This document shows positions 45,201-49,739 of a stretch of DNA of 64,000 nucleotides, piece by piece. The notes under the pieces are model-generated. The model searched no databases. It was not told where the DNA came from and saw only the letters and a program-made list of their open reading frames with translations. The stretch lies in sequence record MK308676.1; one strand, 5' to 3'. The stretch's first letter is position 1. Each line of letters opens with the position of its first letter. The translations under genes and the position numbers were made by a program.

Positions 45201-45530
45201 ATGACTGGTAAAACGCAACAGGCGACATGGGATGACGTCCATGTTCAATCTAACCTTTGTCTTGTAGGTATACAAGGCTGTCACTCGCTGATGGAGAAAC
45301 TTACTCCATTGCCTCTAAGTGCAGAGTCTAAATCCATTCTTGCTGATTGTTCGACCCAGCTCTTAAGTCTCTGTGAAGAACGTGAGCGCATCATGTCCAG
45401 AGGCGTTAAAGCAGCGAATGCTCATGTAAGCCCCGATGACTTCATGAAGCTCTACAACAAGTACGGTGAAATCGCAGCGTGTAATCGCGGCATTGATAGC
45501 ATCCGTGTTAAACTTTCCAACATAGTGTAA
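45201..45530 (+). CDS. Hypothetical protein
   Basis: 109 aa; GGAG RBS. Confidence 0.6.
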   Translation: MTGKTQQATWDDVHVQSNLCLVGIQGCHSLMEKLTPLPLSAESKSILADCSTQLLSLCEERERIMSRGVKAANAHVSPDDFMKLYNKYGEIAACNRGIDSIRVKLSNIV

Positions 45531-45542
45531 AGGAAAAGGAAA

Positions 45543-47144
45543 ATGGAAAAAGACGAATTTGATTTAAGCTACCAACCGGAAGCCCTTCCGGAACAGGAGC
45601 AAGAAACAAAGGAACCTGAAGCCCAACCGGTTAACTTTGAATATGACGAGCTGGATATGCCGGAAGGCTACCAGTTTGTTTCGCCGTTCATGGAAGCTAA
45701 CGAAAGCGACATGGCGGAGATTGCCCTGCCCGGTTCTGAAACAGACGTGAATCATTTGGCTCACCTAATCCACGAAATACGTTCAGACGAAACTCTGAGC
45801 ATCGAAGATAGACGAGCGACTGAAGAATACCTTCGTCAGTTGTTAGGTCAAGGCACGCTAAGTGAACGCTATGGCGCTCTGCATGAAGGCAAGACTACCT
45901 TGGCTCAGTACCTAGCCATAGATGGACGCCGCGTTGCTAACTCGCGCATTGGCTTTAAGACCGAAGACGGCACTCGCTTACGCGGTGCTGCTGCGCGTTC
46001 TCGCATGCAGGCTAAACTAGGCACAGGTACTCCTGTGGTTTGGCGCATGTGGCACTCAGGTTTCTCTGTTGAAATGGGTAACTTTGCTCCAGGTGAAATC
46101 TTTAAGCACCAGGTCGACTTGCTTACTGCGGTTGAGAACATCGCTATTAAGACTAACGGCCAAATCCTTTCTGCCGACGATGCGTACTATGTAACTAAGA
46201 TGACCGACTTCTGTATCGAGCACATCTATAACTGTACCATCAAGAACTGGTCACATGACGTTATCCGTCAGCGCCTAGATGTTCGCGACATCTACACTCT
46301 TCTTTGTGCAGGTCTTGCAGCAATGTACCCTAACGGTTATCCGTTTGTTCGTGACTGCCGCTTTAAGATAGATAAAGAGAAAGCCTGTGACTGGTCTACT
46401 CTTAAAGGTCTGGAAGATGTTCGCAAGATTACCCGTCTAGACTTCCGTCTACTTACTTGGGAAGACAGTGACAAGTTCACTCCTGCGCAAGTACGTCTTG
46501 TTAACATGCCATGGGACTCTGTGACGGTCAAGGACCTAGACGACTACCGCGATAACCTACCGGAACAAGTAGTTACCACAGGTGTTCTCAATGAGAAGAC
46601 TGGCGGTGATTCTATCTGGCGTGCGGTTATTCGTGCACCGTTCTATTCTGACTATCGTCGAGAAACTCTAGAATGGGTTTCTGACGTAGAGCTACAAGTT
46701 GACCGTGCTCTAGCTAATGCCCCTGATACTTCTCCTGAAGCTGCTAACGTTCTGCGCCGTCAGTCGATTGAGTCTTACATCAAGCGCATTACTGCACAGC
46801 GTCACTCTAGCTGGATTCGCGAAATTGTCGAGATGGAAGGCACCAGTGAGATTCTTTACGGTGGCGAGAACGTTGGCAAGGAAGGTTTGATTAACCGTAA
46901 AGAAGTCGTAGAGCGTTTAGCTGACATGTCTGAAAACGGTGAAGTCTGTGCTAACCTTATTAAAGCGGTAGAAGACTATAAGGCGGAGAACACATTCTCG
47001 TTCGTGGCTATTCCTAACTTCCAGTGTCCTACTTGTAAGAAAGGCCAGTCTGAACCTAAGGCTACACGACCACACCTAATCCCGATTCCGGTGACTCACT
47101 ATTTTTTCGCTATAACGGTATCGAATTCCGGCCAGAGAAACTAA
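45543..47144 (+). CDS. Conserved protein, possibly baseplate hub assembly-like, with CxxC motif
   Basis: 533 aa; PNFQCPTC near the C-terminus. Confidence 0.45.
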   Translation: MEKDEFDLSYQPEALPEQEQETKEPEAQPVNFEYDELDMPEGYQFVSPFMEANESDMAEIALPGSETDVNHLAHLIHEIRSDETLSIEDRRATEEYLRQLLGQGTLSERYGALHEGKTTLAQYLAIDGRRVANSRIGFKTEDGTRLRGAAARSRMQAKLGTGTPVVWRMWHSGFSVEMGNFAPGEIFKHQVDLLTAVENIAIKTNGQILSADDAYYVTKMTDFCIEHIYNCTIKNWSHDVIRQRLDVRDIYTLLCAGLAAMYPNGYPFVRDCRFKIDKEKACDWSTLKGLEDVRKITRLDFRLLTWEDSDKFTPAQVRLVNMPWDSVTVKDLDDYRDNLPEQVVTTGVLNEKTGGDSIWRAVIRAPFYSDYRRETLEWVSDVELQVDRALANAPDTSPEAANVLRRQSIESYIKRITAQRHSSWIREIVEMEGTSEILYGGENVGKEGLINRKEVVERLADMSENGEVCANLIKAVEDYKAENTFSFVAIPNFQCPTCKKGQSEPKATRPHLIPIPVTHYFFAITVSNSGQRN

Positions 47145-47161
47145 GAGGTACTCTTAGCTCT

Positions 47162-47614
47162 TTGGATGTCGAATTAACGGAAGAAGAAAGGGAAGATGCT
47201 TGGCAGCAGTATTTCGCGATACAAACCCAAGACCCGATAGCGCGTAAGATGATGGCTCGTGAAATCTTTGAGACTTTCTTTAAGATTCACGACCATAATG
47301 TGCCTGACCCGCTCGACCCTTTCCCTCTGGTAACGACTAAACCAAAACGTGCCCAGAACTGGGCGTCTAGAGAAACCATTAAACGGTTGATTGCTATAGG
47401 CGCTCCAGATAAGACAGGCATGAGTCTAAATGAACTCCTCTATGAAACTAACATGTCTGACTTCGAAGACATCATAGAAGCATGTGAGGACGTCATGAAG
47501 AGAGAAAGCGCTACTGCTACTAAACTACGGAATGAATCCGAAGAGCAGATGGCGAAGGTTCTCAATACCATCGAAGAACGAAAGAAAGATAATAATTCAA
47601 GCCCTCTGGCCTAA
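47162..47614 (+). CDS. Hypothetical protein
   Basis: 150 aa; TTG start after GAGG; operonic. Confidence 0.55.
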   Translation: MDVELTEEEREDAWQQYFAIQTQDPIARKMMAREIFETFFKIHDHNVPDPLDPFPLVTTKPKRAQNWASRETIKRLIAIGAPDKTGMSLNELLYETNMSDFEDIIEACEDVMKRESATATKLRNESEEQMAKVLNTIEERKKDNNSSPLA

Positions 47615-47624
47615 TGGCCAGAGG
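47603..47624. terminator. Bidirectional terminator hairpin
   Basis: cctctggcc-taat-ggccagagg between convergent genes. Confidence 0.7.
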
Positions 47625-47635
47625 AGCTTTATTAT

Positions 47636-48148
47636 TTACAGGTCTAGTTGTGGCTCTTGAACGATAGCATCAATCCACTTAAGTGCAAGTGCTTCTTCAG
47701 GCCACTTATAAACATCGCGTTCCAGTTCCTTCAAGATTTCTTCAGCGGGACGACCCCACATCTCAGACATCATGTCGAAAAGAATCTTGTTATAGTGACG
47801 CATTGGACGTAGGCCAGTCTCTGAGCGCTCAGCCATACCGCGAGCTTCATGTAACATGAACTGCGTGTTAGGAAGCGATAGGCGCTTACCTGGAGTACCT
47901 AGGCCAATAACACAGAATGCACCAGCACTCATCACGGTACCGACAGCTACGGTCACGATGTCGCTTTTCGCTTTCTTAGCCGCATGGTACATAGCTAGAA
48001 GCGCAGGGACAGAACCGCCGTATGAATGTACGGGTAGGTAAATGTCTTCACTAGAAATGGAGTCGAAGAATTCGATTTGCTGGATTACACTGTAAGCCAT
48101 GTTATCGTCGAATGGGCCTTCAATGTAGACAGTTCGGTCAAGTACCAT
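47636..48148 (-). CDS. clpP: ClpP-family serine protease subunit
   Basis: VHSYGG, VMSAG (Ser), PNTQFMLHE (His), ERDVY (Asp), EEALALKWID. Confidence 0.9.
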   Translation of the reverse strand: MVLDRTVYIEGPFDDNMAYSVIQQIEFFDSISSEDIYLPVHSYGGSVPALLAMYHAAKKAKSDIVTVAVGTVMSAGAFCVIGLGTPGKRLSLPNTQFMLHEARGMAERSETGLRPMRHYNKILFDMMSEMWGRPAEEILKELERDVYKWPEEALALKWIDAIVQEPQLDL

Positions 48149-48150
48149 GA

Positions 48151-48720
48151 TTACTCTCCTAACTGTTGTTGAGGCGGACGTGCTGCTTCAATAGGGTTTT
48201 CAAAGTTAGGACGACCCATAACCTGTAGACCCATAGCGATTGCTTCTTCGTAACGGAAGATGTCGTTCTCTTTCATGAAGTCTTTAATGTCATCTGGGGT
48301 GATGCCATCGAATGCTTCAGCGATACGCATACGTGCACGGGCGTTTACTGCTTCTTGGGCAGCGGCACCAATCTCAAGGTCGGTTAACTGTGCATAATCA
48401 GAGCCACGCTGTTCGTAAGGAAGGATAAGAACAGACTCTGTAATGAATGCGTTTTCTTTACCTACAGCGGCTGCTAGCACTAAGTCCATGATGGACAACA
48501 TGTCTAGATAGCGCACCTGAGGCTTAAGAGCTAGGTTCTGACGAATAACATCGTACATGCCTAGTAGAACATGAGGACACACGATAAGGCTTTGCTGTTC
48601 CAACAGTGGCTGGAACGGTTCCTTACCTTCTGTCTCACGTTTAGCATTTAGAGCTTCTACTTCTGCAAAGAAACGCATCAGTGCAAGTGGAGTGCTCAAC
48701 TTGTGACGTTTATGGTACAT
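48151..48720 (-). CDS. Degenerate ClpP paralog (ClpR-like pseudoprotease)
   Basis: ATG 48720 after AAGGGA; GMYDVIRQ..KPQV, LTDLEI and YEEAIAMGL align to ClpP; catalytic His position is Pro. Confidence 0.55.
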   Translation of the reverse strand: MYHKRHKLSTPLALMRFFAEVEALNAKRETEGKEPFQPLLEQQSLIVCPHVLLGMYDVIRQNLALKPQVRYLDMLSIMDLVLAAAVGKENAFITESVLILPYEQRGSDYAQLTDLEIGAAAQEAVNARARMRIAEAFDGITPDDIKDFMKENDIFRYEEAIAMGLQVMGRPNFENPIEAARPPQQQLGE

Positions 48721-48812
48721 TAGGATATCCCTTAAAAGATGAATAAAAGAACGGCCGGTTCTATTGGATTCGAAGAAAAAAGAAAGAAGAATAGGAGAGA
48801 GCCGAAGCCCTC

Positions 48813-49739
48813 TCATAAATGTTCTGCATATTGTTTCTCTTTAAAGGTTTTAAAGCGTATGCGGATTTTGTCCTTTACGTCTTCCGGGACGTGTACTGCT
48901 GCGGTCAGTTTATCGGCTAGGTCTTTCTCTGTTAGTTCCCAGTAATGACCCATGGCATCTCTTAAGTTAGGGAAGGTTTTAAAGCCGTCTTTATTCTTCC
49001 CCGCTAGCCATTTATCGCCCGACTTCTTAACGCCTAAGATATCGCCTGGTTCGACCCTAGATAGCACATTGAGATATCCGTTTAAAGAAGCTGGGAGGAA
49101 GCAACAGGTGTCTTTAGAATAAAGACGTAGCTCTGGAGCAAGAAGGTCTTTATCGAGCTGGTAAGTCGAATCAGGGATGTTTTCCGTATACCACTTAGCG
49201 AAGTTCTGAAAGTTAAACCAATCAGGATGGACTTCACAATCTTTATATGCTTCGTAGTCTTTGCTGTCTTCTTTATAGCAGCGCTTAAACATATTCATCC
49301 ATGCCGAATACTCAGGCAGATTCTTCCCTCCAACATACTGCTTATACGGGCCATCTCCCAAGAAACCTCTGCCTTCGATTACCGGATGGCACTTGTCTCT
49401 AATCTCTCCCGACTTAAGGCGCTCTTTACGCGTCCACAACTTAAAGCCCGTTTTTACAAACTCTACATGTACTTTTAGGCTGTTCACGTATTCTAAAACT
49501 CGGACAGTGCCATGGTGTTTTGTTTCATGTAGAGTGCCTTCTAGATAAGGGTTATCTAGGCTCTTGTCTCTGACGTCTCCTTTTGATAGTGCCGTTTTGA
49601 ACACTACGTCGATGTTTCCCGTATTCAGGAACTTTACCTTGACCTTATAAGGGTCGTTGTTTTCTATAACCTCGACGGTCCCCGAGCGCTTAGTCTCGTG
49701 TGTAGAACCGACAGGATAAGTGCTTATTTCATATTTCAT
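48813..49739 (-). mobile_element. Free-standing HNH-like homing endonuclease
   Basis: YSAWMNMFKRCY...WFNFQNFAKWY...LDKDLL...CCFLPASLN; duplicated N-terminal domain. Confidence 0.7.

What the first reader, a model, noticed from the sequence alone, without database searches (positions are those of the whole stretch)
47636..48720. Phage operon of an active ClpP plus a degenerate ClpP paralog (ClpP/ClpR-like pair)
Seen: 47636-48148 has the full Ser-His-Asp triad but starts at the DRTVYI strand, lacking the N-terminal loop region. The coupled upstream gene (2-nt gap; AGGAG overlaps its stop) aligns to ClpP: GMYDVIRQ..KPQV vs SIYDTMQ..KPDV, LTDLEI vs ATDIEI, KENDIFRYEEAIAMGL vs ERDRFLSAPEAVEYGL. 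Its catalytic His position is Pro (LILPY vs VMIHQ). Established: hetero-oligomeric ClpP/ClpR or ClpP1/P2 cores occur in cyanobacteria, plastids, Plasmodium and mycobacteria. Inference: a phage-encoded hetero-oligomeric protease, or subunits that mix into host ClpP to redirect or poison proteolysis.
Basis: partly seen in the sequence, partly recalled or inferred. Interest (0 to 1): 0.7.

Follow-up and report, generated by a model that had tools for sequence, protein, structure and literature searches.

The report
Phage ClpP with dead ClpP partner
A giant Vibrio phage carries two back-to-back genes, one a shortened but catalytically intact ClpP protease subunit and the other a diverged ClpP copy that has lost its catalytic residues; the pair is conserved in a small group of related giant phages and resembles the ClpP/ClpR cores of cyanobacteria and chloroplasts, which had not been described in a virus.

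Summary
The window is the first 64 kb of Vibrio phage vB_VmeM-Yong, a 290-kb jumbo phage.

- **Downstream gene.** 47636-48148 (-) is a ClpP (Pfam E 3.7e-30) with Ser74/His100/Asp145. It starts at strand beta1, so it lacks the roughly 24-residue axial-loop region.
- **Upstream gene (X).** 48151-48720 (-) has no Pfam, PHROG or PDB hit as a single sequence, but it is a true ClpP homolog:
  - a profile of its eight relatives matches ClpP (hhalign 96%, E 4e-9; PDB E 1e-7);
  - an AlphaFold model built from family members only (pLDDT 86.6) superposes on ClpP (Z 16.5, rmsd 2.6 A).
- **Catalytic residues in X.** His is replaced by Tyr102 (not Pro), Asp by Asn152, and the GG oxyanion motif is lost.
- **Selection.** X is under purifying selection (dN/dS 0.14).
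- **Conservation.** In all 12 phages or contigs that carry X, it sits immediately upstream of a short ClpP and is translationally coupled to it.
- **Context.** The phage has a separate S80 prohead protease and no ClpX-like gene.

Hetero-oligomer formation is the best reading but is untested. This is a new variant of a known kind. In phage BONAISHI the equivalent gene is annotated only as 'Clp protease subunit' and was never analysed.

The parts
47636..48148 (-). Catalytic subunit (C): 170-aa N-terminally truncated ClpP with Ser74/His100/Asp145 and a handle region four residues shorter than in canonical ClpP
   Evidence: Pfam PF00574 E 3.7e-30. PDB ClpPs match at E 8e-27, with residue 2 aligned to chain residue 25. 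Triad and 4-residue handle deletion seen in the alignment with E. coli ClpP and nine orthologs.
48151..48720 (-). Pseudo-ClpP subunit (X): 189-aa diverged ClpP paralog with Tyr102 at the His position, Asn152 at the Asp position, the GG oxyanion motif lost, a canonical-length handle, no N-terminal loops, and a disordered tail from residue 172
   Evidence: hhalign 96%, E 4.3e-9. PDB profile search returns ClpP only, E 1.2e-7. AF2 model pLDDT 86.6. Foldseek and VIA-align: Z 16.5. dN/dS 0.14.
48156..48160 (-). Shine-Dalgarno AGGAG for the ClpP gene, embedded in the last codons of X (translational coupling)
   Evidence: Sequence read. An SD-like purine run sits in the same place in all 12 loci, with X-stop to ClpP-start gaps of -4 to +9 nt.
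48728..48733 (-). AAGGGA ribosome-binding site, 7 nt upstream of the X start codon (ATG 48718-48720)
   Evidence: Sequence. All homologs begin at the aligned Met.
48795..48814 (-). Hairpin (8-bp stem, TTCG loop) plus T-run: terminator of the upstream HNH endonuclease gene. It sets the upstream limit of the X-ClpP unit and argues against the alternative ATG at 48816.
   Evidence: The equivalent hairpin plus T-run precedes X in most related loci.
48761..48770 (-). AATCCAATAG, a promoter-like motif between the terminator and X. Similar AATCYNNTAG-type words occur at the same place in most related loci.
   Evidence: Weak: 7 matches in the window against 4.5 expected.
47603..47624 (.). Bidirectional hairpin terminator between the convergent ClpP gene and the plus-strand gene 47162-47614

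Best explanation
The two genes form one small transcription unit, bounded by terminators. It encodes two translationally coupled ClpP-fold subunits.

- C (47636-48148) keeps the Ser-His-Asp triad.
- X (48151-48720) has lost His, Asp and the oxyanion GG motif, and is kept by selection as a non-catalytic subunit.

I infer that X and C co-assemble into a phage-specific ClpP-type barrel. This could be mixed rings, or an X ring stacked on a C ring, as in ClpP/ClpR and ClpP1/P2 cores. X, whose handle has canonical length, would supply ring-to-ring or scaffold contacts that C, whose handle is four residues shorter, cannot make alone.

Both subunits start at strand beta1 and lack the axial gating loops. 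The positions that line the ATPase-docking pocket are poorly conserved, and the phage has no ClpX-like gene. The core is therefore probably open-gated. It would degrade peptides and unfolded or disordered proteins with no unfoldase, or with an unconventional one.

The core is non-structural, because the phage has its own S80 prohead protease. It is encoded among the RNA-polymerase and helicase genes of a chimallin-encoding (nucleus-forming type) jumbo phage.

Shown: identity, fold, catalytic degeneration, coupling, co-inheritance and selection. Inferred: co-assembly, the open gate, ATPase independence and the substrates.
For: - **Homology and fold of X:**
- **Catalytic columns:**
- **C is a ClpP with a triad and truncated N-terminus:**
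- **Coupling in all 12 loci:** an SD inside X's last codons and gaps of -4 to +9 nt.
- **Co-occurrence in 12 of 12 loci**, within a conserved block of RNAP-beta, a 650-aa protein, helicase, X and ClpP.
- **Co-divergence:** X is one clade (support 100/98) and C one group (82/83), with broadly congruent subclades.
- **Selection and rate:** dN/dS is 0.14 for X. X evolves faster than C in 41 of 45 phage pairs.
- **Handle length:** C is four residues shorter in all 10 orthologs, while X keeps canonical length.
- **No ClpX or Lon-like gene** in the whole genome by tblastn.
- **Separate prohead protease:** Peptidase_S80, E 3.8e-60 (also PMC7765460).
- **Specificity:** other jumbo-phage ClpPs (Va1, A4, SCTP-2) are full length and unpaired. 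Twelve IMG/VR ClpP loci have a single ClpP-like ORF each.
Against: - No direct evidence that X and C bind.
- X's own profile does not detect its partner C at E < 10, although it detects canonical ClpP. The two are only 16% identical.
- The docking-pocket residue list comes from memory, and the alignment is at about 28% identity. The 'no ATPase' inference is therefore soft.
- tblastn would miss a very diverged AAA+ partner, or one that is not ClpX-like.
- No transcript or protein data exist: no RNA run holds this sequence.
- Some X orthologs (L010, L011, BONAISHI) keep Ser and His at or next to the catalytic columns. 'Dead' may not hold for the whole family.
Confidence: 0.55

Rival explanations
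1. X, alone or together with C, inserts into or stacks onto the host ClpP. The resulting chimeric cores would poison or redirect host ClpXP/ClpAP proteolysis.
For: X keeps a canonical-length handle, and its best local similarity to cellular ClpP lies in the handle strand and helix start (TDLEI against ATDIEI). X's profile matches canonical ClpP better than it matches its own partner. Iyer et al. 2021 (PMC7824862) suggested that jumbo-phage ClpPs are deployed against the host.
Against: X is never found without the phage's own short ClpP (12 of 12) and is translationally coupled to it. That pattern is what stoichiometric partners show. The TDLEI-like handle motif is conserved only in the Yong subclade of X. 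Both phage proteins lack the N-terminal loops that pack around the pore in canonical rings.
Confidence: 0.15
2. C works as a homo-oligomeric protease. X does not enter the barrel but acts as a regulator, for example an inhibitor, chaperone, pseudo-substrate or adaptor with a ClpP-like fold.
For: X and C are only 16% identical. X evolves faster. Its disordered, acidic C-terminal tail of variable length could be an interaction arm.
Against: X retains the whole ClpP fold, including the handle: 162 residues superpose at 2.6 A. Known dead ClpP paralogs such as ClpR are barrel subunits (established knowledge). The conserved C-terminal 'GE' is explained by the embedded SD, not by a protein motif.
Confidence: 0.15
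3. The pair is a capsid-maturation (prohead) protease system of the ClpP-like type.
For: PHROG families matched by C are labelled 'head maturation protease' (best E 1.8e-12). Several GenBank records label related jumbo-phage ClpPs that way.
Against: The phage has a dedicated Peptidase_S80 prohead protease of the phiKZ gp175 type (E 3.8e-60). C matches cellular ClpP much better (E 8e-27) than it matches the prohead-protease PHROGs. The genes sit between RNA-polymerase, helicase and other non-structural genes, not in a head module.
Confidence: 0.05
4. X is a decaying duplicate with no function.
For: It has lost catalytic residues and is very divergent.
Against: dN/dS is 0.14 overall and about 0.04 over the first 130 codons. 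The ORF is intact in 12 phages that share only 21-44% identity. The AF2 model is confident.
Confidence: 0.02

Closest known systems
ClpP/ClpR cores of cyanobacteria (ClpP3/ClpR), plastids and the Plasmodium apicoplast
   Same: A triad-intact ClpP is paired with a ClpP-fold paralog that has lost catalytic residues. The genes are adjacent and co-expressed, as in cyanobacteria. The dead subunit is kept by selection.
   Different: The pair here is viral. X forms its own clade, apart from the cellular ClpPs sampled; ClpR sequences themselves were not included. Both subunits lack the N-terminal axial loops. The catalytic subunit has a 4-residue handle deletion. No Clp ATPase is encoded with the pair. 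Assembly has not been shown.
ClpP1/ClpP2 heterotetradecamers (Mycobacterium, Listeria, Streptomyces, Chlamydia)
   Same: Two ClpP paralogs come from one operon and are expected to form one barrel. The top structural match of X is a chain of the Listeria ClpP1/2 heterocomplex, though only marginally (Z 16.5 against 16.3 for homomeric ClpPs). Listeria ClpP1 also has Asn in place of the triad Asp (my knowledge).
   Different: In those systems both paralogs are, or become, catalytic and keep their N-terminal loops and ATPase docking. X lacks His and Asp.
Single, full-length ClpP genes of other jumbo phages (Vibrio phage Va1, Escherichia phage A4, Salicola phage SCTP-2; Iyer et al. 2021, PMC7824862)
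   Same: A phage-encoded, non-structural ClpP homolog in a giant phage.
   Different: Those proteins are 194-231 aa with the canonical N-terminus and handle length, and they have no adjacent ClpP-like partner.
Vibrio phage BONAISHI ORF86/ORF87, pir03 QNI21073/QNI21074, C-ZP2022 gp184/gp183
   Same: True orthologs of the pair, in the same gene order. BONAISHI ORF86 is already labelled 'Clp protease subunit' from a BLAST hit of E 5e-5 (PMC6207643).
   Different: They are only 17-19% identical to X of Yong in structural alignment. In pir03 and C-ZP2022 the gene is 'hypothetical'. No paper discusses the pairing, the lost triad or the truncations.
N-terminal deletion mutants of E. coli ClpP and ADEP-opened ClpP (my knowledge)
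   Same: Removing or displacing the axial loops opens the pore and allows ATPase-independent degradation of unfolded proteins. Here both natural subunits begin after that region.
   Different: Those are laboratory or drug-induced states of a homomeric enzyme. This one is natural and paired.

Membership tests
ClpP (MEROPS S14 / Pfam PF00574), tested on the downstream protein C | Sequence match above the family threshold | tested here: met
   105.6 bits against a cut-off of 20.2, E 3.7e-30. PDB ClpPs match at E 8e-27.
ClpP (MEROPS S14 / Pfam PF00574), tested on the downstream protein C | Ser-His-Asp triad and the GG oxyanion motif | tested here: met
   Ser74, His100, Asp145 and G44-G45. Ser and His are invariant in 10 of 10 orthologs; Asp is present in 9 of 10, with Asn in L006.
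ClpP (MEROPS S14 / Pfam PF00574), tested on the downstream protein C | N-terminal axial loop/gate region (about the first 20 residues of mature ClpP) | tested here: not met
   The protein starts at strand beta1: residue 2 aligns to chain residue 25. All 10 orthologs start there. No in-frame upstream start exists.
ClpP (MEROPS S14 / Pfam PF00574), tested on the downstream protein C | Canonical handle (strand plus helix E) length | tested here: not met
   Four residues shorter between His and the end of helix E in all 10 orthologs.
ClpP (MEROPS S14 / Pfam PF00574), tested on the downstream protein C | Hydrophobic pocket for the IGF/IGL loops of ClpX/ClpA | tested here: inconclusive
   Of the positions I recalled from memory, several are charged or polar in C (Leu48 to Glu, Phe82 to Lys/Arg) and in X. 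The alignment is at about 28% identity and no structure of C was made.
ClpP (MEROPS S14 / Pfam PF00574), tested on the downstream protein C | Double-heptamer barrel assembly | not testable with these tools
   No multimer prediction or experiment was available.
ClpR-type non-catalytic ClpP paralog, tested on the upstream protein X | ClpP fold | tested here: met
   AF2 model from a family-only alignment, pLDDT 86.6. Foldseek top 50 hits are all ClpP. VIA-align Z 16.5, 162 residues at 2.6 A. hhalign 96%.
ClpR-type non-catalytic ClpP paralog, tested on the upstream protein X | Loss of one or more catalytic triad residues | tested here: met
   His is replaced by Tyr102 and Asp by Asn152, and GG is lost. 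The Ser column holds Ser76 (MAFFT, and the N-cap of helix 77-86 in the model) or Ile77 (HMMER). These columns are not conserved across the 12 X proteins.
ClpR-type non-catalytic ClpP paralog, tested on the upstream protein X | Obligate co-occurrence with a catalytic ClpP | tested here: met
   12 of 12 loci, immediately upstream and translationally coupled.
ClpR-type non-catalytic ClpP paralog, tested on the upstream protein X | Incorporation into a mixed ClpP/R core | not testable with these tools
   Needs co-purification, native mass spectrometry, cryo-EM or multimer modelling.
ClpR-type non-catalytic ClpP paralog, tested on the upstream protein X | Orthology with cyanobacterial or plastid ClpR | not tested
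   No ClpR sequences were in the tree. X is a separate, long-branched clade relative to 21 cellular ClpPs, so an independent origin is likely. I file it as ClpR-like by analogy, not as a ClpR ortholog.
Pfam PF00574, tested on X itself | Score above the gathering threshold | tested here: not met
   No hit for Yong X at E up to 1. Three orthologs score 14-18 bits, below the 20.2 cut-off.
ClpP-like prohead (head maturation) protease | It is the phage's capsid protease and sits in the head-gene module | tested here: not met
   A separate Peptidase_S80 prohead protease is present (E 3.8e-60). The neighbours are RNA-polymerase, helicase and HNH genes.

The most novel reading that the evidence does not exclude
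A clade of nucleus-forming jumbo vibriophages makes its own self-contained, gate-less hetero-oligomeric ClpP/pseudo-ClpP protease. It works without any AAA+ unfoldase. In the infected cell it would clear host or unimported, unfolded proteins, or defence factors. This would be a viral reinvention of the ClpP/ClpR architecture, stripped of the elements that tie ClpP to ATPases.
Probability: 0.3. Interest if true: 0.75.

Novelty: new variant of a known kind. Interest (0 to 1): 0.6.

Why it matters
Mixed cores of active and dead ClpP subunits are known from cyanobacteria, plastids and apicoplasts, and ClpP1/P2 cores from several bacteria. I found no paper describing one in a virus.

This pair is naturally minimal. 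Both subunits lack the gating loops, the catalytic one has a shortened handle, and there is no cognate ATPase. It could therefore show what a dead ClpP subunit contributes structurally, and how far a ClpP barrel can be uncoupled from unfoldases.

For phage biology it points to a phage-controlled proteolytic activity in chimallin-encoding jumbo vibriophages. That bears on how these phages remodel the host proteome, and on annotation: X is 'hypothetical' in Yong, pir03 and C-ZP2022.

Tried and rejected
- **Single-sequence searches with X found nothing useful.**
  - Pfam, PHROGs and PDB gave no hit.
  - BLASTP of X against its partner gave E 0.16.
  - The protein-atlas feature and structure search gave only noise; its ESM model has pLDDT 0.40.
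  - Single-sequence AF2 gave pLDDT 39.9.
- **tblastn of X against 50,697 phage records** found only the four Yong isolates. Orthologs in pir03, BONAISHI and C-ZP2022 were found only through gene order.
- **Two-sequence profile against ClpP** gave only 10.7% probability, P 0.003. The result became significant only with the eight-member family.
- **The search for related loci with the X alignment** failed because no stretch was conserved enough.
- **P0026**, a 3832-aa protein, scored E 2.9e-22 against X. It is an artefact: sixteen tandem 203-aa repeats each add 3-5 bits, so I left it out.
- **Alternative start at ATG 48816** (221 aa, as called on the Logan contig) was rejected. The extension contains the HNH gene's terminator hairpin and T-run. 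All homologs start at the Met of 48720, which also has its own ribosome-binding site.
- **The conserved C-terminal 'GE' of X** is not a protein motif. It is the footprint of the embedded Shine-Dalgarno sequence.
- **Sequencing runs:** only DNA or metagenome holders turned up and no RNA run.
- **The motif AATCYNNTAG** is not enriched in the window: 7 matches against 4.5 expected.
- **Origin of X:** the tree cannot tell whether X arose by duplication of C or from a separate ClpP, because three groups meet at one node.

Full report
**Where the window comes from.** The region is 100% identical to four isolates of Vibrio phage vB_VmeM-Yong (MK308674-7, 278-290 kb, host Vibrio mediterranei), and window coordinates equal genome coordinates. 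Nearly all CDSs in that record are 'hypothetical', including the two under study (QAX96029 and QAX96030). The phage is phiKZ-like:
- it has split RNA-polymerase beta/beta' genes around the locus;
- it has a homolog (E 6e-26) of BONAISHI ORF71, which PMC10587174 reports as chimallin;
- it has a Peptidase_S80 (phiKZ gp175-type) prohead protease elsewhere in the genome (E 3.8e-60; also listed in PMC7765460).

**The observation.** Both ORFs are on the minus strand at the stated coordinates.

The downstream ORF, called C here (47636-48148, 170 aa), is a ClpP.
- It matches Pfam PF00574 at E 3.7e-30, covering profile positions 16-181 of 182.
- It matches solved ClpPs at up to E 8e-27, with residue 2 aligned to chain residue 25.
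- Aligned with E. coli ClpP (taken from NC_000913), it starts at strand beta1, so about 24 residues of axial loop are missing.
- It keeps the GG oxyanion motif and Ser74/His100/Asp145.
- No upstream in-frame start exists.

The upstream ORF, called X here (48151-48720, 189 aa), ends 2 nt before C's ATG. AGGAG (48156-48160) lies in its last codons.

The longer 221-aa reading from ATG 48816 is unlikely. That extension holds the terminator hairpin and T-run of the upstream HNH endonuclease gene. All homologs also begin at the Met of 48720.

**Is X a ClpP homolog?** As a single sequence X finds nothing: no Pfam, PHROG or PDB hit, BLASTP against C at E 0.16, and an atlas search that returned noise. 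An exhaustive phmmer search of 1.84 billion representatives found six true relatives at 23-44% identity. Word-index searches added an 88% relative and one more.

With these relatives the picture is clear.
- The eight-member profile matches a 21-sequence ClpP profile at 96% probability, E 4.3e-9.
- Against all PDB sequences the top 60 hits are all ClpP, best E 1.2e-7.
- A local HMM of 12 X proteins hits the canonical ClpP of Salicola phage SCTP-2 at E 1.2e-8.
- AlphaFold2 given only the nine family members, with no ClpP sequences, produced a confident model (pLDDT 86.6, pTM 0.79). The single-sequence model reached only 39.9.
- Foldseek against PDB returns ClpP for all top 50 hits (E about 4e-7 to 2e-6).
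- VIA-align gives Z 16.5 and rmsd 2.4-2.6 A over 158-162 residues. X residues 1-173 map onto ClpP residues 26-195.
- The independent BFVD model of the same protein agrees (TM 0.86). The next viral matches are 174-aa and 190-aa entries, which I take by length to be the pir03 and BONAISHI X orthologs (BFVD gives no names for them).

**Catalytic state of X.**
- HMMER and MAFFT both put Tyr102 at the His position.
- Asn152 is at the Asp position, with Asp153 next to it.
- The GG oxyanion motif is gone.
- The nucleophile column is alignment-dependent. MAFFT, and the model's helix start at residue 77, put Ser76 there; HMMER puts Ile77 there.
- Across the 12 X proteins these columns are not conserved: the Ser column holds S/T/Y/G and the His column holds Y/I/F/A/H/T/S.
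- The L010 and L011 orthologs and BONAISHI keep Ser plus His at or next to these columns. Residual activity cannot be excluded for them, but the Yong protein cannot be a Ser-His-Asp protease.

X is not decaying. Against the 88% relative, dN/dS is 0.14 overall and about 0.04 over the first 130 codons.

**Conservation of the pair.** Every X found lies immediately upstream of a short ClpP. These are nine metagenomic or isolate sequences plus pir03, BONAISHI and C-ZP2022, which I found by gene order.
- Seven of the ten complete partner ClpPs are 163-171 aa, against 194-231 aa for canonical phage ClpPs.
- One partner (L006) carries a roughly 140-aa acidic tail.
- On two short contigs only the start of the ClpP gene is present.
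- The stop-to-start distance is -4 to +9 nt, and an SD-like purine run sits inside X's last codons.
- The surrounding block (RNAP beta, a 650-aa protein, helicase, X, ClpP, then three convergent genes) is syntenic.

In the tree, X is one clade (support 100/98), C one group (82/83) and cellular ClpPs a third. The X and C subclades are broadly congruent. X evolves faster than C in 41 of 45 phage pairs.

All 10 C orthologs are four residues shorter than canonical ClpP between the catalytic His and the end of handle helix E. X keeps the canonical length.

The pairing is clade-specific. ClpPs of Vibrio phage Va1, Escherichia phage A4 and Salicola phage SCTP-2 are full length (194-231 aa) and unpaired. 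Twelve IMG/VR loci found with the C profile each have a single ClpP-like ORF.

**What it most likely does.**

Shown: a terminator-bounded two-gene unit that encodes a triad-intact but truncated ClpP and a selected, non-catalytic ClpP-fold partner, co-inherited and translationally coupled.

Inferred: the two co-assemble into one barrel, as all characterised dead or semi-dead ClpP paralogs do (ClpR; Listeria ClpP1; established knowledge). X may supply the handle contacts that the shortened C handle lacks.

Several points suggest an open-gated core that acts on peptides and unfolded proteins without a conventional unfoldase:
- both subunits lack the axial loops;
- pocket positions that I recalled for IGF-loop docking are partly charged in both subunits;
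- tblastn finds no ClpX or Lon-like gene in the 290-kb genome.

This parallels N-terminal deletion mutants and ADEP-opened ClpP (my knowledge). This last step is the weakest.

A capsid role is unlikely, given the separate S80 prohead protease and the non-structural neighbourhood.

Mixing into host ClpP is not excluded. X's handle resembles the canonical one. But this idea fits less well with the strict coupling to the phage's own ClpP.

**Comparison with what is known.**
- Iyer et al. 2021 (PMC7824862) noted ClpP in some jumbo phages and suggested an anti-host role.
- The BONAISHI genome table labels ORF86 'Clp protease subunit' from a BLAST hit of E 5e-5, without comment (PMC6207643).
- The pir03 paper lists only the ClpP (PMC7765460).
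- Nine full-text searches found no paper describing a phage ClpR-like subunit or this pairing.

I therefore rate it a new variant of a known kind. It is ClpP/ClpR-like in logic and probably independent in origin. Three features distinguish it: double N-terminal truncation, a shortened catalytic handle and no cognate ATPase.

**Limits.**
- There is no evidence of physical association, expression timing, localisation or substrates.
- No RNA run holds the sequence.
- The pocket analysis rests on remembered residue numbers and a low-identity alignment.

Noticed in passing
window 48813-49739 (-), with 48721-48816 and the first ~60 codons of X (48541-48720): An HNH homing-endonuclease gene (PHROG 953, E 1e-37) is inserted between the helicase and X. 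Relatives L004, L006, L007 and L010 have no gene there. Against the 88% relative L002, the HNH tail, the 96-nt spacer (identical) and X codons 1-60 are barely diverged (dS 0.1-0.2). The rest of X and the start of ClpP have dS 0.66-0.85. This looks like a co-conversion tract from recent homing.
   Followed up: partly
window 48761-48770 (-); same position in L003, L004, L006, L007, L014: A conserved word of the AATCYNNTAG type lies about 40-50 nt upstream of X, just after the upstream terminator, in most related phages. It may be a phage promoter element. In the window it occurs 7 times against 4.5 expected, which is not significant.
   Followed up: partly
C-termini of the catalytic subunits: window 47639-47647 (-); L006:7632-7640; L005:7023-7031: Several catalytic subunits end in a short hydrophobic/acidic motif: LDL in Yong, LDI in L006 after a ~140-aa acidic extension, LDV in L005, GLA in L007. 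Its function is unknown. It could be a docking or targeting peptide.
   Followed up: no
L006:6711-7643: This ortholog of the catalytic subunit has Asn in place of the triad Asp (as in Listeria ClpP1), a 9-residue N-terminal extension and a ~140-residue acidic, low-complexity C-terminal tail.
   Followed up: no
L010:5112-5663, L011:1229-1786, L014:2923-3495: Some X orthologs (L010, L011, BONAISHI ORF86) keep a Ser and a His at or next to the catalytic columns although the GG motif is lost. Catalytic degeneration has gone different ways in different lineages.
   Followed up: partly
window 47603-47624: A 9-bp GC-rich hairpin with T-runs on both sides serves as a bidirectional terminator between the convergent ClpP gene and the plus-strand gene 47162-47614.
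   Followed up: yes
window 45201-47614 (+): Three plus-strand genes (109, 533 and 150 aa; PHROGs 4585 and 12109, function unknown) converge on the ClpP gene. They are syntenic next to the pair in all longer related contigs. The 533-aa protein ends in a CPTC-type cysteine motif.
   Followed up: no
MK308674 76333-78237 (outside the window; L016:12333-14237): A homolog (22% identity, E 6e-26) of BONAISHI ORF71, which PMC10587174 reports as chimallin, so Yong is probably a nucleus-forming phage. No homolog of the BONAISHI tubulin-like ORF59 was found at E < 1e-3.
   Followed up: partly
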